Positions 11,443-42,371 of a stretch of DNA of 48,781 nucleotides are shown here, one piece after another. Position 1 is the stretch's first letter; every line of letters begins with the position of its first letter. The notes beneath the pieces were generated by a model, which saw only the letters and a list, made by a program, of their open reading frames with translations, made no database searches and had not been told where the DNA came from. A program made the translations under genes and the position numbers. Location of the stretch: the NCBI GenBank assembly GCA_044892505.1, contig CM097882.1, positions 513,127,220-513,176,000 on the forward strand, written 5' to 3'. The stretch is from Schmidtea nova (lineage: Eukaryota).

Positions 11443-11721
11443 GCGTGTTTACGCGAGTCCCTCCCAACTCCACTCGCATGTCTAGTCAGTCGAGAACGTC
11501 AATTAGTTGCAACTCCGTCATGGATTAATTTAACCACTGATGAGCGAATTTGTCTAACAACATTTTCTCGAATTCATTCCAATATTTCGGATGTTCTCAT
11601 TCGAATACCTTCAATAGATGAACATACTCTATATCGACTCGTTCAAGTGGAATTAATTAGAGATGTCGCCATATTGATTCTGTGTGGATCGGATTTATCA
11701 ATTCCTGAATTGAAAATTAAA
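11443..11721 (+). CDS. FUZ: fuzzy planar cell polarity protein, internal exon (longin 2 region), 93 codons
   Basis: ttcattag|GCG...ATT AAA|gtaatg, phase 0/0. ESLPTPLACLVSRERQLVATPSWINLTTDERICL...YRLVQVELIRDVAILILCGSDLSIPEL aligns with recalled FUZ EAAGTTFVSLVVSGRVVAATEGWWRL...HRLLTLTLLPSLELCLLCGPSPPLSQL. Confidence 0.85.
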
Positions 11722-13047: not shown

Positions 13048-14039
13048 TACCCTGTTTTTTGGTTATAAGGTACGACCTTAGTAAACTTTAAAAGTTTTTT
13101 TTGAGCCCAAAGGTACCTTAGTAAAGAATGGTACCTTAGTATCAAGTGGAATCTTAGAAAAAAAACGGTAAAAAAATTTATATTCAGAAAATATAAAAAG
13201 TATTAAAAATTTTTATTCAAAAAATTCTACTTCCTCTTCACTAGCAAAGTTTTCTCCATCAAGAAATATATCAATAAGCTGATCACGAATATCATTATCA
13301 TCTTTTTCTTCTTCATCTTTATCATCCAACAATTCCTCAACCATTGGCTCATTAATATCATCCAACTCTTCTGTATAAAAATCAATGGTTGTCGATCTGA
13401 AACCATTTTTATTGCAGAAACTGGCACTGCCTTCCATGCCTCAGATATCCAATGACAAATCTCTTCGTAGGAAGCTCGCTTCATATTTCCAGACTTTGTG
13501 TATTCTTGATATCCTTTTACCATCCAATTCTCCCAATGACGTTGGAGATGAGTTTTAAATGATTTATTTACACTTATATCTAGAACTTGTAATTTTTTTG
13601 TTAAACCACCTGGAATCATACCAATCAGTGACCCAGCTGCAGTAAATTTAGATTTGACTTCATCAGTGCGATGACCAGGGGCAGAATCGATCATGATAAG
13701 TGATTTTCTATTGAAAAGCGCCATTTTTCTTTTCATCCAAACTTTTTCATGCCACAGCAGAGTTGCCGTTGAAGTCATTTGAGATTTTTCATTAGCTGAT
13801 ACGATTACATTTGATGGAAAGGAACCTGATGGAATTGTTTTTTGTCGAAAAATCACATAAGCTGGTAATTAGTATCTTAATTTTTTAAAAAAATTTTATT
13901 AAATATTATAACGTAGAATTAGTACCTTAGTAAAAAGTGGTACCTTTGTAAAGATGGTACAAAAATCGTGGGCTTTCAAAAACTTTAATAAAGTCGTACC
14001 TTAGTAGGAAGTAGTACCTTATAACCAAAAAACAGGGTA
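13048..14039 (-). mobile_element. pogo-family deletion derivative A (keeps DDE region and C-terminus)
   Basis: TIRs taccctgttttttggttataaggtac / gtaccttataaccaaaaaacagggta. ORF 13227-13856 has MIDSAPGH, IPGGLTKKLQVLDISVNKSFK. Confidence 0.92.
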
Positions 14040-25132: not shown

Positions 25133-27220
25133 CAGGGGCGTAGCTAGGGGGGGGGCGAGTTGCCCCGGGCGCCGAAGAGGAAGATACAGTATATTCATGC
25201 TAGACTAACTCTCTCTCAAAGTTTGCGTAAGATGCAAGAAAAACAGTAGTTTCCTTCCTTGCATCAGGATGTCGTCCACAGTCTAGTTGTATATCTGTTG
25301 CTTCAGTCCATTTAGTTGTTCTGCAGCATCAAACTTGTTAGGTTCTTAGGAAGGGAGAGAGCCATGTCACTCATGTGTTTCATTTCAAACCCATCAGGCA
25401 CAGATCTCCGGCTCAGGCAAGGTGGAACTTGGTGACCCCTTCATGCTCCAGCCACCAGTCATTTCACATCGTTGACGTAGAGCCAATGTTTTGAAAGCTG
25501 CTCTTGCTATCTAGAACGTCTGTGCAGCACACCTTGCCCACGCCGTGTGGGAACATGGGCATGGCCTGCTGAACAGACGGTCTAGATAGATAGTATAGGA
25601 GCCTCATCACCGCTCTGCCTCAGCCTCTCTTGAAAAAGTAATCACTGAGAAACTGGATTCTGACAACTTACCTCTAGAAGATTGTAGATCACAATGTTAT
25701 GATAATGCGTCTGTGATGACAGGGCATATATCTGGTCTTCAACAAAGAATCTGTGCCCGAAATCGACGAGCTGTGTTTGTCAACTGTGACAATCATAGTT
25801 TGAACTTGGTTGGAGTTCATTCAGCCAAACAAGATGCGATCGTTGTAACCTTTTTTGGAACGGTCGAAAGTATTTTTGTTTTCTTTTCTCGTTCTTCAAC
25901 GCTTCGCTGGGAAGAGCTAAAGAAAGCAATACCTATCACTTTGAAGCGGGAATCAGAAACCCGGTGGAGTGCAAGAGTGGAGGCCGTCAAACCAATCTTC
26001 GAAGGATTAACTGAACTTGTGGAACTGCTAGAGAAACTATCAGATGACAGAAATCAGACAAATGACACCAGAACTGATGCAGAAAGGTTGCTGCCGTGTA
26101 TTCTGGACTTCAATTTCCTCGTGCTACTTTATTTCTGGAACACAATTCTACGAAAAATTGATCAAGTTCAAAAACGTCTTCAAGACCCCACCATGAATTT
26201 CAAGGATGCAGCGTCTGATCTGGATGCATTAGAGAAAAACATCAACTTGGAGCGCGACGATTTGTGTGAAGGCGCAATTAACAGTGCAAAGATCAGATGT
26301 GCAGAATGGGGAGTGGAAATTCAACGACGAACAAGAAGGAAACGCATGCCTGGAGAGTTGGCACGGGATGCCGGGCTTTCAGCTGAAGAAGAGGCATCAC
26401 GAGTTATGAAAGGTGTGTTGGATAGATTTCAACAGGAACTAACAACGAGATTCATTCGTCTCACTGACTTAAACTCAAAATTCGGATTTTTACTGGATGT
26501 TAAAAATCTCACCAAGAGCGATGATTTGGATATTCTTCGCGCAAATTGCTTAGATCTAGCTATTTTCTACGACACAGATGTTGATGGAAGAGAACTATTC
26601 AACGAAATATGCGACTGCAAAATGCTGCTAAACGCGAGAGGTGATACTTTACCATTGACTCCCTTGGAACTCATTTCTTTCATTGTGTCATATGGTGATG
26701 ATGTTTTTCCAAACTTGCGCATTGCTCTGCAAATTCTTTTAACAATTGCAGTATCAATAGCCAGTTGCGAGCGTTCCTTCAGCAAGCTGAAGCTAATACT
26801 CTCGTATCTTAGAGCATCTATGGGTCAGGATCGTCTTTCTGATCTTGCACTGCTAAGTGTCGAGAAGGAAACAGCTGAAAAAATCGACTTCGATGATATT
26901 ATTAACAAATTTGCAAGCATGAAGGCGAGAAAAATAAATTTGGTATAACGTACGTTTATTATCATGATAATTTTAAGAATGAATGGGCCGTTGTTATAGC
27001 TTGTAACTCAACTGTTGGTTAGGCAAAGTACTGTAACGAACACGGACATTTTTTCTGCGTCTGTAATACTCTGTATATAGATTAAAATAAAAATTCGTTT
27101 CACTTGAAATGGCTTCAAATTGTGTTTAACTTTTACTTCTTCATTGCAACGGGGGAGGCCCGGTGGGGCGCAAAATTTATAGTTTCGCCCCGGGCGCCAA
27201 AAACCCTCGATACGCCTCTG
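25133..27220 (+). mobile_element. hAT element, 5'-internally deleted, young
   Basis: TIRs caggggcgtagctagggg / accctcgatacgcctctg; TSD tgtgaaa(a)c / tgtgaaac; subterminal gccccgggcgcc at both ends. Confidence 0.9.
25713..26948 (+). CDS. hAT transposase C-terminal ~2/3, uninterrupted ORF
   Basis: In-frame CRSQCYDNASVM just upstream, then CDNHSLNL, ETRWSAR, and the SIASCERSFSKLKLI..MGQDRLSDLALLS dimerisation domain. No N-terminal zinc finger or first catalytic Asp. Confidence 0.9.
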   Translation: MMTGHISGLQQRICARNRRAVFVNCDNHSLNLVGVHSAKQDAIVVTFFGTVESIFVFFSRSSTLRWEELKKAIPITLKRESETRWSARVEAVKPIFEGLTELVELLEKLSDDRNQTNDTRTDAERLLPCILDFNFLVLLYFWNTILRKIDQVQKRLQDPTMNFKDAASDLDALEKNINLERDDLCEGAINSAKIRCAEWGVEIQRRTRRKRMPGELARDAGLSAEEEASRVMKGVLDRFQQELTTRFIRLTDLNSKFGFLLDVKNLTKSDDLDILRANCLDLAIFYDTDVDGRELFNEICDCKMLLNARGDTLPLTPLELISFIVSYGDDVFPNLRIALQILLTIAVSIASCERSFSKLKLILSYLRASMGQDRLSDLALLSVEKETAEKIDFDDIINKFASMKARKINLV

Positions 27221-39201: not shown

Positions 39202-40173
39202 TACCCTGTTTTTTGGTTATAAGGTACGACCTTAGTAAATTTTAAAAGTTTTTTTTTTGAGCCCAAAAGTACTTTAGTAAAGAATGGTACCTTAGTATCA
39301 AGTGGAACCTTAGAAAAAAAGCGGTAAAAATATTTATACTCAGAAAATATAAAAAGTATTAAAAATTTTTATTCAAAAAATTCTACTTCCTCTTCACTAG
39401 CAAAGTTTTCTCCATCAAGAAATATATCAATAAGCTGATCACGAATATCATTATCGTCTTTTTCTTCTTCATCTTTATCATCCAACAATTCCTCAACCAT
39501 TGGCTCATTAATATCATCCAACTCTTCTGTATAAAAATCAATGGTTGTCGATCTGAAACCATTTTTTATTGCAGAAACTGGTACTGCCTTCCATGTCTCA
39601 GATATCCAATGACAAATCTCTTCGTAGGAAGCTCGCTTCATATTTCCTGACTTTGTGTATTCTTGATATCCTTTTACCATCCAATTCTCCCAATGACGTC
39701 GGAGATAACCCATTTCTTCAAATGATCCTCCAATGCTGGCCATTGAATGGGTCGAATTCTCTTTACTACTTTTGCATTTTTATTCCCAATCGATTGCAGA
39801 AGATCTTTTTGTTTTTTCCATCGCTTGATGAGGTTAATGTGACAACCATAATGTTCAGCTGCTTTTGAAATGGATGAATTCAAAGCATAATTCACAGCAG
39901 CTTCTTTAAATTGTATTGTATATGTTTTTCGTTTTTTGTCTGCCATTTTTCAATTTGATTTGAATTTGTTAAATTAATTATATAATTAAACAATATTATT
40001 GATTTATTATTAGTATCTTAATTTTTTTAAAAATATTTTATTAAATATTATAACGTAGAATTAGTACCTTAGTAAAAAGTGGTACCTTTGTAAAGATGGT
40101 ACAAAAATCGTGGGCTTCCAAAAACTTTAATAAAGTCGTAGGGAGTAGTACCTTATAACCAAAAAACAGGGTA
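39202..40173 (-). mobile_element. pogo-family deletion derivative B (keeps N-terminal HTH and C-terminus)
   Basis: Same TIRs as 13048-14039. ORF 39674-39946 (KRKTYTIQFKEAAV..IKRWKKQ..WPALEDHLKKWV) is joined to RRHWENWMV. Confidence 0.92.
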
Positions 40174-40480
40174 GTTTGGAATATGGCCCAATTCCCAAAG
40201 AGAAAACGGACAGGAAAATAAAAGCAGATTCATTCATCAAAGTTAGCCAGACTATATCATACAACGGCCTGATTTATGAACGATAGGAAACGATAGTCCG
40301 ATATAAACATGGATCCAAGAGAAAGGAAATCAAAATGGATTAACTGAAATTTATTAATTTATATATGAAGTATCTATAATATAAATAATCGAAAATTTAT
40401 TGTTGATTCGTCTTCTTTATTAGGGCAGCTCACCAGTTAAACCCTGTAGTAAACTTTAATTTTCATTCATATTATTACTA

Positions 40481-40668
40481 TTATTATTATTATCAATAAT
40501 TCTCATAATGATGACTATAGATCAAAAAATTTTTTTAAACAATACCACAATATTTCGGCACAGCCTTTATACACACTTGATAAAGGCTGTGCCGAAATAT
40601 TGTGGTATTGTTTAAAAAAAAATTTGATCTTTAGTCATCATTATGAGAATTATTGATAATAATAATAA
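40481..40668. repeat. Near-perfect palindrome, ~89-bp arms, 9-nt loop
   Basis: 40481-40570 is the reverse complement of 40580-40668; inner ~40 bp perfect; loop acacacttg. Confidence 0.95.
40569..40608 (+). ncRNA. Minimal type I hammerhead ribozyme motif (U3-A8 variant), Penelope-type
   Basis: AUACACAC-UUGAUAA-A-GGC(UGU)GCC-GAA-AUAU-U-GUGGUAU: helix I of 7 bp with a bulged A, 3-bp helix II, palindromic AUAU helix III. Confidence 0.6.
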
Positions 40669-42371
40669 AAAAAGATCAAAGGTGAAAAAAGATAATTATG
40701 ATATTACTATTATTATTAATTTTTAGAATAAAATAAATAACTATAAATAAGAACAAAATAATAATAAAATAAAATCGAATTAATTAATGAGCAAGCAAAG
40801 CAATTCCAAACGCCAGGGTTTGGCTACCCTGGACGACGTTTGGAAAAGGTTTGTTGCTAAGAATTACGAAATTGGGCGTAGAATATTATTATTATTGCTG
40901 TTGGGATAATTTGTATTATTTCTAAAGTTTGTATTATTTCTATCATTATCATTACTAATATAATACCACAAAAATTAATTTAAATATTAATGTAAACAAA
41001 TTAAAAAGAATTTTTAAATTTCAAATATTGTAAAAAAAATTTTTTGAAAATTATATCAAAAACATCTTTAAATCAAACCTTGCCATGATTTAATTGTAAT
41101 TAATTTCAGAACAGTCTCAGGTGGTTCCAACATACTTTGCAAACAAATTAGAAAAACATTTATCCATACAGAACAATTTATTGGGATATAATATAAATGT
41201 ATCTGCAACTGAGACTGTAAATGATAATATCAAATATCAGTATTATTAAACTAAAATAAATAAAAGAATATCTTTCCCAAAAAATTTAGCAGAGAAGTTT
41301 GATTTAATTCCTTCTATTAGGCCAAGTTATGAACTTTCAATAATAATTCTATGATTTGTTGGTATTTTATGATTTACAATTAATGTTTGTCTTAACGAGT
41401 AACACTGGAAATAAAATCAGTTTCGGTTCTAATAATTCTTTGACAATAATTGAATAGTGAGATATAACTCTGAATATTATTAATAAATAAATTATTCAAA
41501 TAATAGTATAACCCTGAATATTATTAATAAATAAATTATTCAAATAATATGCTTAAAAAATTTGGAAAAATTAATTTGAGAAGATAATTCTTCAAAATCT
41601 TTTTTAAAAAAACAATTTCATAAAAATAATGAAATTGATTGAAAAAATTCCTTATATAGCTGGGTACAGCAACTCTCATTAGTGAGAGAGATAACTTTAC
41701 ATAATTGAATAAATGCATGCCGACAAATCGGGTGATCTCCGAAATACACACACAACATCATTCCATAATCAATAGTGTGTACGGTGAGCAACTTTTATCC
41801 TAAAATTATTTAAATTATATTTCTAAATAAAAATCGATTTCGATCCAATTAACGAAAATAAAAAATGAACTGAAGAAAATTCTTTGAATGCTGAAAACAA
41901 TATGCTGATTTAAAACAATTCAAAAAAATGTTTCTATTTCAATTAAACTGCCAGTAAAAATAAATTCAAAAAAATAACTGTTTATTTTGTTTCAAACTAG
42001 TTCACCTGTTTTCATACAATAAAGAAAACTATATTCAGGTTTTCTATTAATATTAGTAGACATAATGAAACTGAAAAAAAGCAAATAAATCACTTACACC
42101 TGAAAGGCTTTGATTTAATGAAAGCTTTCAAAAAAATTGAAAATTATGTCAAAACTTTTGAAAGTCTGATATATTTTTTAACAATTTAGCTGTTTTAATT
42201 TTATTTAGTCTGACAGCAGAAATAATTTTGAATTGCAAATTGGCACGAAAAATGATAATAAATCAACCAATAAATCTGAAAATGATTAATAAATAAAGTT
42301 GGCATTATATATACATAATAAATTTTTTAAATTAAATTTTGTCAGGCATTTTATCAACAAGTTATTGCTAT

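What the first reader, a model, noticed from the sequence alone, without database searches (positions are those of the whole stretch)
40481..40668. Hammerhead ribozyme with compensatory U3-A8 core at the apex of a long palindrome
Seen: UUGAUAA replaces CUGAUGA, so both partners of the 3-8 pair change together. Helix II is GGC/GCC, helix III is the palindromic AUAU, and helix I (AUAC-A-CAC/GUG-GUAU) uses the unique loop sequence. Known: C3-G8 is a Watson-Crick pair in hammerheads, and Penelope-like elements carry minimal, dimer-acting type I hammerheads and form inverted repeats. Inferred: a fold-back Penelope or retrozyme remnant in which the ~89-bp hairpin competes with the ribozyme fold. It lies on the sense strand of the FUZ intron, so it could yield dsRNA or cleave the pre-mRNA (predicted site after 40601).
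Basis: partly seen in the sequence, partly recalled or inferred. Interest (0 to 1): 0.7.

Follow-up and report, generated by a model that had tools for sequence, protein, structure and literature searches.

The report
Penelope retroelement stub with hammerhead motif
The palindrome is a dead, back-to-back double stub of a very abundant Penelope-like jumping gene. The hammerhead-like motif at its tip is that element's own minimal ribozyme motif, a kind already described in flatworm Penelope elements, and it is almost certainly inactive in this copy.

Summary
40481-40668 is a near-perfect palindrome. At 40577-40601 (+) it carries a type-I minimal hammerhead (min-HHR) motif: U3-A8 core, one extra A before helix II, G10.1-C11.1, palindromic AUAU helix III, U17.

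It is not chance. My descriptor hits the window once and hits 300 shuffles never. A covariance model built only from unrelated Penelope-like elements (PLEs) finds this one site in the window (26.4 bits, E 0.004).

My first reading, a DNA-transposon MITE with a chance look-alike, was wrong. The arms are the last ~90-130 nt of a young PLE encoding reverse transcriptase plus GIY-YIG endonuclease. The genome holds at least 70 ORF copies at 99-100% identity and about 58,000 copies of this motif.

The window copy has two 5'-truncated 3' ends joined head to head, a 34-nt tail on one side only, and an 11-16-bp target duplication in ATT-rich DNA. All of these are published PLE hallmarks, as is the U3-A8 variant (Schistosoma PLEs).

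In this copy the -122 kcal/mol hairpin buries the motif and no partner copy lies on the same strand, so self-cleavage is unlikely. The FUZ-intron claim is unverified. No RNA data could be laid.

Verdict: a new member of a known kind.

The parts
40474..40484 (.). Left target-site duplication (ATTACTATTAT). The shared string runs up to 16 nt (to 40489), because it merges with the ATT repeats at the end of the arm.
   Evidence: The same string, with its diagnostic ACT interruption, follows the tail at 40703. Other copies with unique flanks show 11-13-bp duplications, and some reach 20 bp or more.
40485..40570 (-). Antisense arm: an inverted, 5'-truncated copy of the PLE 3' end without the tail. 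It breaks off inside the hammerhead core (it starts at A6), so the minus strand has no complete motif. The outer boundary is ambiguous within 40481-40489.
   Evidence: Its reverse complement aligns to positions 101-186 of the parent 3' UTR (L092).
40569..40570 (.). Junction of the two arms, with a 2-nt microhomology (AT) that fits either arm.
   Evidence: Both arm alignments to the parent include these two bases.
40571..40668 (+). Sense arm: a 5'-truncated PLE 3' end that starts 8 nt (counting the AT) upstream of U3 and runs to the usual end of untailed arms.
   Evidence: 97% identical to parent UTR positions 90-186 (three substitutions and one 3-nt indel over the arm plus tail).
40669..40702 (+). 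34-nt PLE 'tail' extension, present at this end only.
   Evidence: Exact match to the parent's terminal sequence. The 29-mer inside it occurs 29,294 times in the genome. A 30-40-bp tail at one end only is a published PLE signature (PMC8557442, PMC11167929).
40703..40713 (.). Right target-site duplication.
40569..40609 (+). Minimal type-I hammerhead motif of the PLE (U3-A8 variant). Helix I 40569-40576 with 40602-40608. Core 40577-40583. Bulged A 40584. Helix II 40585-40593. G12-A15.1 40594-40597. Palindromic helix III 40597-40600. U17 40601 (predicted cleavage after it).
   Evidence: Descriptor hit. Only hit in the window of a covariance model built from foreign PLEs. The same motif in the parent scores 30.2 bits.
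40481..40668 (.). The palindrome as reported: the mutually complementary part of the two arms.

Best explanation
This is a dead-on-arrival insertion of a very young, very abundant Penelope-like retroelement (PLE: reverse transcriptase plus C-terminal GIY-YIG endonuclease).

How the insertion formed. Only the last ~90-130 nt of the element's RNA were copied, and they were copied twice in opposite orientation. The two short cDNAs were joined head to head at a 2-nt microhomology. The result is an 89-bp-stem palindrome with the PLE-specific 34-nt tail on one side and an 11-16-bp target duplication in ATT-rich DNA. This is inferred from the anatomy and from the published finding that a PLE enzyme nicks and extends both target strands.

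What the motif is. The hammerhead-like motif on the sense arm is the element's own minimal type-I hammerhead. In the parent it lies in the pseudo-LTR, 98 nt after the stop codon and 39 nt before the ATG of the next unit. It has the U3-A8 core variant, the extra base before helix II, G10.1-C11.1 and the self-complementary AUAU that would let two copies pair through helix III.

What it probably does. In multi-unit PLE transcripts such motifs are thought to cleave weakly, as dimers or with help from the element's protein. That step comes from the literature and was not shown here.

This copy. The motif is a passenger. There is no second copy on the same strand, and the left arm, transcribed first, pairs with the whole motif. 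It should therefore not cleave. The locus can at most give a long hairpin RNA.
For: Repeat family.
- The 208-nt query has 1,552 first-look candidates, and all 40 that were scored match at 86-100% identity.
- The exact apex occurs 989 times.
- The tail 29-mer occurs 29,294 times.
- The hammerhead 29-mer occurs 57,792 times.
- Controls were 0 in every case.

Parent element.
- Four of 20 randomly sampled tails run into a long body.
- L092 carries a 625-aa ORF with RVT_1 and GIY-YIG (27.7 bits, above the cut-off).
- Its homologues carry the same two domains, and the catalytic residues are invariant in alignment A1.
- At least 70 ORF copies are 99-100% identical.

Window arms. They align to the parent 3' UTR at 97% identity. 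One arm starts 8 nt before U3, the other starts inside the core, and the tail is on one side only.

PLE hallmarks.
- Other copies have different, near-symmetric apexes.
- Flanks are (TTA)n, (TAA)n or (TA)n microsatellites, with duplications of 11 to 20 bp or more.
- These match published PLE signatures: inverted 5'-truncated copies, a one-sided tail, a microsatellite bias (PMC8557442), and cleavage and extension of both strands with internal start of reverse transcription (PMC11167929).

Motif.
- One descriptor hit in the window and none in 300 shuffles.
- 16 hits in 58 foreign PLE loci against none in 100 shuffles; 15 of the 16 are on the ORF-sense strand.
- L100, whose protein is only 27% identical, has the same U3-A8 core, bulged A and AUAU, with helix II one compensating pair longer.
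- Other loci have C3-G8 with 3-bp helix II and helix III sequences ACGU, AAUU or AGCU.
- In alignment A2, 93.6% of cells pair against 59.7% in shuffles, and 11 of 13 pairs change on both sides.
- The model built from A2 finds only 40569-40609 in the window.
- The U3-A8 covariation, the extra base between positions 9 and 10.1, G10.1-C11.1 and palindromic 15.2-16.2 are exactly the features published for metazoan and Schistosoma PLE min-HHRs (PMC4209133).

Inactivity of this copy.
- Hairpin -122.2 kcal/mol against -8.3 kcal/mol for the hammerhead fold.
- Only 14 of 31 sampled sister copies still pass the descriptor, and their changes are uncompensated.
Against: - No catalysis was tested. Published PLE min-HHRs cleave poorly in vitro and only as dimers or with protein.
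- Helix II here has 3 bp, against 6-8 bp in the published Schistosoma and Drosophila examples.
- No Rfam hammerhead family matches, even at E <= 10.
- The foreign motifs used for covariation were picked by a descriptor that demands pairing, so part of that signal is built in.
- Within the family the motif is nearly invariant, because the family is young. Nothing shows selection on it inside this genome.
- The twin-priming origin of the palindrome is inferred, not observed.
- 989 copies share this same asymmetric apex, which could instead mean copying of a palindromic master.
Confidence: 0.85

Rival explanations
1. The motif is a conserved part of the PLE, but not as a ribozyme. It would serve as a protein-binding or priming structure, or as part of the pseudo-LTR promoter or 5' UTR, and would be hammerhead-shaped only by descent.
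For: - Published PLE min-HHRs have very low activity. In the Anolis element, catalytic mutants did not affect insertion in vitro, and no RNA-seq ends were seen at the cut site (PMC11167929; PMC4209133).
- Here helix II has only 3 bp.
- 78% of motif-bearing arms end within 26 nt 5' of the motif (57,792 against 12,892). Some other feature, such as an RNA 5' end, therefore sits right there.
Against: - The catalytic boxes, the 3-8 covariation (9 C-G and 3 U-A), G10.1-C11.1 and H17 are kept across PLEs whose proteins are only 25-53% identical. A mere binding site would not explain this easily.
- The literature reports weak cleavage of dimers and protein-assisted cleavage.
Confidence: 0.2
2. This copy was not made by a fresh double priming event. 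It is a retro-copy of an already palindromic, non-autonomous master element (a mini-PLE, retrozyme-like in dependence) that the PLE enzyme moves in trans.
For: - 989 copies share the same asymmetric 29-nt apex within 2 mismatches.
- The palindrome carries a valid PLE 3' end on both strands.
- The apex occurs in both orientations relative to the tail, about 19:18. Transcription of a two-tailed master from either strand would produce this, and two-tailed copies exist (L016, L062).
Against: - The same apex sits on at least two sequence backgrounds.
- In nearly every copy both arms carry the same variant (GTGG with CCAC, or GTGT with ACAC). That fits two cDNAs of one RNA per event better than descent from one master followed by mutation.
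- Random tails show many different apexes.
Confidence: 0.3
3. It is a chance hammerhead look-alike at the tip of a DNA-transposon MITE or fold-back element. This was my own first reading.
For: - It is a short palindromic repeat with target duplications and more than 1,000 copies.
- No Rfam hammerhead match.
Against: - The parent encodes RT plus GIY-YIG, not a transposase.
- The element is asymmetric, with a one-sided tail.
- The motif recurs in unrelated PLEs and is found by a model built from them.
- No hits in shuffles.
Confidence: 0.02
4. The hairpin is a microRNA or other small-RNA gene.
For: Sub-threshold Rfam matches to mir-266, mir-31 and mir-147 across 40533-40617 (33.9-49.4 bits). The stem is very stable.
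Against: - All matches are below the gathering scores, and the same stretch matches on both strands (mir-31 and mir-147 on each), as any long perfect hairpin would.
- There is no seed identity.
- It is one of roughly 29,000 transposon stubs.
- Small RNAs from it would be a by-product.
Confidence: 0.03

Closest known systems
Minimal hammerhead motifs (min-HHRs) of metazoan Penelope-like elements, in particular the U3-A8 variant found with the Cercyon PLEs of Schistosoma mansoni (Cervera & De la Pena 2014, PMC4209133)
   Same: - Type I topology, with virtually no helix III and palindromic 15.2-16.2.
- An unpaired base between positions 9 and 10.1.
- G10.1-C11.1.
- Short helix I.
- U3-A8 in place of C3-G8.
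- Position in the pseudo-LTR on the sense strand.
- Thousands of mostly solitary or opposite-strand paired copies from truncated elements.
   Different: - Helix II has 3 bp with a 3-nt loop, not 6-8 bp. Several metagenome PLEs also have 3-4 bp.
- The host is apparently a planarian.
- The copy number is far higher: about 58,000 against about 1,300-2,000.
- The family is almost invariant in sequence, whereas the Schistosoma motifs are described as highly variable.
Canonical structure of PLE insertions (Evgen'ev & Arkhipova 2005; Craig et al. 2021, PMC8557442; Frangieh et al. 2024, PMC11167929)
   Same: - Extreme 5' truncation.
- An adjacent inverted 5'-truncated copy that forms an inverted repeat.
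- A 30-40-bp tail at one end only.
- AT-rich or microsatellite targets.
- The insertion end lies inside the start of the ORF.
   Different: - Both copies are cut down to about 90-130 nt, so the whole insertion is a bare 218-bp hairpin.
- Most arms of the family stop within about 12 nt 5' of the hammerhead. I found no description of such a pile-up.
Non-LTR retrozymes of animals (Cervera & De la Pena 2020, PMC7229834; Li et al. 2026 preprint, doi 10.64898/2026.07.22.740005)
   Same: Short non-coding derivatives of PLE pseudo-LTRs that carry type-I hammerheads and depend on PLE enzymes.
   Different: Retrozymes are tandem direct repeats that give circular RNAs through two hammerheads on one strand. 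Here the two copies are inverted, and only one complete motif lies on either strand.
Rfam Hammerhead_1 (RF00163) and the other Rfam hammerhead families
   Same: The catalytic boxes and the type I connection.
   Different: No match at E <= 10. Probable reasons are the missing helix III and loop, the U3-A8 core and the extra base.

Membership tests
PLE minimal hammerhead (min-HHR) | Core boxes N3-U-G-A-N-N8-A9 and G12-A-A-A15.1, with positions 3 and 8 Watson-Crick (C-G or U-A) | tested here: met
   UUGAUAA at 40577-40583 and GAAA at 40594-40597, with U3 and A8.
PLE minimal hammerhead (min-HHR) | [quoted passage not shown] | tested here: met
   A at 40584; G40585 pairs with C40593. The same holds in all 12 foreign PLE motifs.
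PLE minimal hammerhead (min-HHR) | Minimal helix III with self-complementary 15.1-16.1 (for dimer formation), followed by U16.1 and H17 | tested here: met
   AUAU at 40597-40600 and U17 at 40601. Foreign motifs have ACGU, AAUU, AGCU or AUAU.
PLE minimal hammerhead (min-HHR) | Short open helix I (4-5 bp) | tested here: met
   4 bp in the parent. In the window copy, 3 + 4 bp around a bulged A. Helix I covaries across PLEs.
PLE minimal hammerhead (min-HHR) | Long helix II (6-8 bp), as in the published Schistosoma and Drosophila examples | tested here: not met
   3 bp plus a UGU loop. Six of the 12 foreign PLE motifs aligned in A2 also have only 3-4 bp, so this looks like a clade trait and not a defining feature.
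PLE minimal hammerhead (min-HHR) | Lies in the pseudo-LTR of an RT plus GIY-YIG element, on the sense strand | tested here: met
   In the parent L092 the motif is at 4652-4676, 98 nt after the stop codon. ORF domains. Sequence.
PLE minimal hammerhead (min-HHR) | Recognised by a sequence-and-structure model built from other members | tested here: met
   Model R1, built from 12 metagenome PLE motifs: window 26.4 bits, E 0.0043, the only hit; parent 30.2 bits. E-values are rough because the calibration was short.
PLE minimal hammerhead (min-HHR) | Site-specific self-cleavage after H17 | not testable with these tools
This needs bench work.
Penelope-like element insertion | Parent with a single ORF encoding RT and GIY-YIG endonuclease | tested here: met
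   RVT_1 at 30 bits; GIY-YIG at 27.7 bits against a cut-off of 22.6. Homologues and conserved residues.
Penelope-like element insertion | 5' truncation with an adjacent inverted 5'-truncated copy | tested here: met
   Both arms align to the parent 3' end, in opposite orientation. Sister copies have variable apexes.
Penelope-like element insertion | 30-40-bp tail extension at one end only | tested here: met
   34 nt at 40669-40702, absent from the left arm. Of 40 sister copies, 37 have the tail on one side only, 1 has it on both sides and 1 has none; the 40th shows only a degenerate remnant of the tail on one side.
Penelope-like element insertion | AT-rich or microsatellite target, and target duplication of variable length | tested here: met
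   Most copies lie in (TTA)n, (TAA)n or (TA)n. Duplications run from 9 to 20 bp or more, most often 11-13.
Rfam hammerhead families (RF00163, RF00008, RF02275-RF02277) | Score at or near the family's gathering threshold | tested here: not met
   No hammerhead family is listed at E <= 10 for 40300-40850 or for the whole parent locus.
MITE or fold-back DNA transposon | Terminal inverted repeats shared with a transposase-encoding parent | tested here: not met
   The parent encodes RT plus GIY-YIG. The ends are asymmetric, with a tail on one side.
Animal non-LTR retrozyme | Tandem direct repeats, each with a hammerhead on the same strand | tested here: not met
   There is one complete motif on the plus strand and none on the minus strand. 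The two copies are inverted.

The most novel reading that the evidence does not exclude
The apexes of the roughly 29,000 palindromic mini-insertions may be a genomic record of the 5' ends of the PLE template RNA.

- Major class. Arms start 2-12 nt upstream of U3, and 78% of all motif-bearing arms stop within 26 nt of the motif. This would mark a pseudo-LTR transcription start or processing site directly at the foot of helix I.
- Minor class. Arms start 1-14 nt after the predicted cut site (+26 to +39). These would be cDNAs of RNA already cleaved by the hammerhead.

If so, a single-nucleotide histogram of arm starts would give in vivo evidence for, or against, self-cleavage of a PLE min-HHR without any RNA data.
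Probability: 0.2. Interest if true: 0.6.

Novelty: new member of a known kind. Interest (0 to 1): 0.3.

Why it matters
Annotation. About 29,000 hairpin-shaped stubs and about 58,000 hammerhead motifs in this 1.25-Gb genome belong to one young, probably still active Penelope-like element. They should not be mistaken for MITEs, microRNA genes or host ribozymes.

Ribozyme biology. The U3-A8 minimal hammerhead, so far described for Schistosoma PLEs, now also appears in a free-living flatworm-type genome and in several unrelated metagenome PLEs, some with a helix II as short as 3 bp.

An open question. Whether PLE hammerheads cleave in vivo is unsettled. The pile-up of arm ends just 5' of the motif is cheap to analyse genome-wide and could bear on it.

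This locus. For the window itself the result is ordinary. It is an inert transposon remnant that at most yields a hairpin RNA.

Tried and rejected
1. MITE or fold-back DNA transposon with a chance motif. I held this view through. I dropped it when random tails ran into an RT plus GIY-YIG body.

2. Covariation argument against helix I. The GTGG to GTGT change tracks the palindrome partner. I withdrew the argument because both variants still form helix I, with the bulge shifted.

3. Rfam.
- No hammerhead family matched. Rfam models expect a helix III, so I treat this as a weak negative.
- The miRNA hits are sub-threshold and come from both strands (mir-31 and mir-147 on each), which makes them generic hairpin scores.

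4. Whole-genome search with RF00163. It scored only 73 of about 106,000 candidates and returned one sub-threshold hit, so it is useless as a control.

5. FUZ. Fuz_longin_1 and Fuz_longin_3 have no match in the window. Fuz_longin_2 gives one weak ORF 29 kb upstream.

6. Cross-species 3' UTRs.
- I used metagenome PLE loci instead.

7. RNA evidence.
- No run holding the sequence is on record as RNA.
I sent those places to no search tool afterwards. One script that read them locally returned no answer, so it may or may not have run; I repeated it without them.

8. Cumulative 29-mer counts as a map of truncation points. The downstream anchor count (46,542) cannot be compared with the others because a 3-nt indel splits the subfamilies. 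I used only the comparison of the motif count with the upstream count.

Full report
**1. The observation**

The sequence at 40481-40668 is a near-perfect palindrome. The outer arms are 58 nt and 91% complementary. The inner arms are 46 nt and 96% complementary. A 9-nt apex lies at 40571-40579. As RNA it forms a single hairpin of -122.2 kcal/mol, z = -28.

- UUGAUAA at 40577-40583
- an extra A at 40584
- GGC-UGU-GCC at 40585-40593
- GAAA at 40594-40597
- AUAU at 40597-40600
- U at 40601
- GUGGUAU at 40602-40608, facing AUACACAC at 40569-40576

Cut out on its own, this 47-nt piece folds no better than shuffles (-8.3 kcal/mol, z = -1.0). No Rfam hammerhead family matches at E <= 10. Rfam gives only sub-threshold microRNA-hairpin scores, with mir-31 and mir-147 matching on both strands.

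**2. First reading, later rejected**

The stretch is a dispersed repeat. There are 1,552 first-look candidates, and all 40 that were scored match at 86-100% identity. The 29-nt apex occurs 989 times against 0 in the control.

I aligned 31 copies and then 40 more. The unit turned out to be larger and asymmetric. A 34-nt extension sits on one side only. The flanks are mostly (TTA)n, (TAA)n or (TA)n. Copies with unique flanks show target duplications. In the window the duplicated string is ATTACTATTAT, at 40474-40484 and 40703-40713.

At this point I took it for a MITE with a chance look-alike of a hammerhead.

**3. The turn**

The extension 29-mer occurs 29,294 times, thirty times more often than this apex. 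I sampled 20 random extensions:
- Four run on into a long unique body.
- Fourteen are short fold-backs, most with their own apex.
- Two end in a microsatellite instead of a second arm.

The window's 'unique loop' is simply the next 9 nt of that body, kept on one arm only.

The body (L092) carries a 625-aa ORF with RVT_1. It also has a C-terminal Cys-rich linker and a GIY-YIG domain (27.7 bits against a cut-off of 22.6). Its homologues carry RVT_1 and GIY-YIG, and the catalytic residues are invariant in alignment A1. This is a canonical endonuclease-bearing Penelope-like element (PLE).

The family is very young. At least 70 ORF copies are 99-100% identical, with open frames of up to about 870 aa. 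Tandem ORFs are spaced 2,762-2,770 bp apart.

What I had called the head of the element is its 3' end. On the sense strand the ORF stop is followed by 98 nt, then the motif, then about 100 nt to the extension.

**4. Anatomy of the window copy**

- The right arm plus extension (40569/71-40702) is 97% identical to positions 90-220 of the parent 3' UTR. It starts 8 nt before U3.
- The reverse complement of the left arm (about 40485-40570) aligns to positions 101-186. It starts inside the core, at A6, and has no extension.
- The two arms meet at a 2-nt microhomology (AT).

Every element of this anatomy is a published PLE signature:
- strong 5' truncation, an adjacent inverted 5'-truncated copy, a 30-40-bp tail at one end only, and a microsatellite insertion bias (Craig et al. 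2021, PMC8557442);
- an enzyme that nicks and extends both target strands at ATT-rich sites and starts reverse transcription at two internal sites that delimit the tail (Frangieh et al. 2024, PMC11167929).

A double, head-to-head priming event is therefore the most economical origin of the palindrome. This is an inference.

**5. Is the motif a real PLE hammerhead?**

Cervera & De la Pena 2014 (PMC4209133) define metazoan PLE min-HHRs by these features:
- type I topology with virtually no helix III and palindromic 15.2-16.2;
- a conserved extra base between positions 9 and 10.1;
- a conserved G10.1-C11.1 pair;
- a short helix I.

For Schistosoma Cercyon PLEs they also report a U3-A8 covariant core with about 1,300 hits, and dual motifs on opposite strands. 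The window motif has all of these. Only their long helix II (6-8 bp) is missing.

I wrote a descriptor from the published features, relaxed to allow a 3-bp helix II and a bulged helix I:
- It hits the window once and hits 300 dinucleotide shuffles never.
- In 58 PLE loci fetched from metagenomes with the protein alignment, it gives 16 hits against none in 100 shuffles.
- 15 of the 16 lie on the ORF-sense strand, mostly just downstream of the ORF or in both pseudo-LTRs.

The nearest foreign motif is in L100, whose protein is 27% identical. It has the same UUGAUAA core, bulged A, UGU loop and AUAU, but its helix II is GGCC/GGCC, one compensating pair longer. L096, L097, L099 and L138 have C3-G8 cores with 3-bp helix II. 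Their helix III sequences are ACGU, AAUU or AGCU. Their helix I sequences are unrelated to one another but paired.

On that alignment:
- 93.6% of cells pair, against 59.7% in shuffles.
- 11 of 13 pairs change on both sides.
- The 3-8 pair is C-G nine times and U-A three times.
- Slid controls collapse.
- Part of this signal is built in, because the descriptor selected for pairing.

A covariance model built from these 12 foreign motifs alone finds one match in the whole window, at 40569-40609 (+): 26.4 bits, E 0.0043. It scores the parent copies at 29.6-30.2 bits.

I conclude that the motif is a member of the PLE min-HHR family. Catalysis remains untested.

**6. State of this copy**

- The minus strand has no complete core, and the plus strand has only one, so no dimer can form in cis.
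- In a plus-strand transcript the left arm comes first and pairs with the entire motif.
- Sister copies decay freely. Only 14 of 31 still pass the descriptor, and their changes in the core and helix II are uncompensated.
- The copy is best seen as an inert remnant. A long hairpin RNA is its only plausible product.

**7. Gene context**

- The window has no Fuz_longin_1 or Fuz_longin_3 match.
- It has one weak Fuz_longin_2 ORF at 11476-11715 (+), 29 kb upstream.
- The genome holds about 17 dispersed intron-less FUZ-like copies and a multi-exon candidate on another chromosome.
- The surroundings are full of transposon remains.
- Whether 40.5 kb is intronic cannot be told from this evidence.

**8. 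Numbers of wider interest**

- The motif 29-mer occurs 57,792 times, about two per tail.
- The 29-mer just upstream of it occurs 12,892 times. So about 78% of motif-bearing arms stop within 26 nt 5' of the motif.
- In the random sample, arm starts cluster at -12 to +1 relative to U3. A minor group lies at +26 to +39, just after the predicted cut site.
[quoted passage not shown] The sample is too small to decide.

**9. Limits**

- Further loci from this genome could not be cut out.
- No listed run holding the sequence is on record as RNA.
I sent those places to no search tool afterwards.
- Other notes of this scan name the organism as the planarian Schmidtea nova. I did not verify this.

Noticed in passing
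genome-wide; sampled in L072-L091: About 78% of the PLE arms that carry the hammerhead motif stop within 26 nt upstream of it (57,792 against 12,892 29-mer hits). In 20 random tails the short arms start at -12 to +1 relative to U3, or at +26 to +39, just after the predicted cut site. This may be the 5' end of a short pseudo-LTR transcript, and of its cleaved form.
   Followed up: partly
L031-L070 and L001-L030 (sister copies of window 40481-40702): The window's exact asymmetric apex (989 copies) occurs in both orientations relative to the one-sided tail, about 19:18. It also occurs on two sequence backgrounds, and in nearly every copy both arms carry the same variant. It is not settled whether this reflects repeated fresh formation or a two-tailed palindromic master.
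   Followed up: partly
L092 (genome C1:1046421-1051694): A 4.3-kb PLE unit built as a giant inverted repeat. The arms are at least 1,500 nt long and 100% complementary, around a 1.1-kb spacer. In addition, 448 nt of its left flank are repeated, inverted, inside it. A second, similar unit lies 75 kb away (L093) with a homologous flank.
   Followed up: no
L092:4555-4774 and the tandem ORF spacings listed: Tandem ORF spacing of 2,762-2,770 bp equals the ORF (2,610 nt) plus the 160 nt from the stop to an ATG at L092:4715. The ORF therefore seems to start inside the '3' end', 39 nt after the predicted cut site, and insertions end inside the ORF start, as reported for the Anolis element.
   Followed up: partly
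window 11476-11715 (+) and about 17 places genome-wide: FUZ/MON1/HPS1-type longin domains 1 and 2 occur as about 17 dispersed, apparently intron-less open frames (retro-copies, or captured by a mobile element?). The window holds one weak longin-2 copy. A multi-exon FUZ candidate lies on contig C2 near 441.72-441.76 Mb.
   Followed up: partly
window 13227-13856 (-), 25713-26948 (+), 39674-39946 (-): Other transposon remains in the window: a pogo-type DDE_1 ORF, an ORF with the hAT dimerisation domain, and a transposase HTH ORF about 550 bp upstream of the palindrome.
   Followed up: no
L126 (metagenome contig Ga0209935_1020524): A textbook PLE layout. The same min-HHR sits in both pseudo-LTRs (556-586 and 3462-3492, sense strand), and an inverted copy lies upstream (365-335). 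It is a useful reference for the architecture.
   Followed up: no
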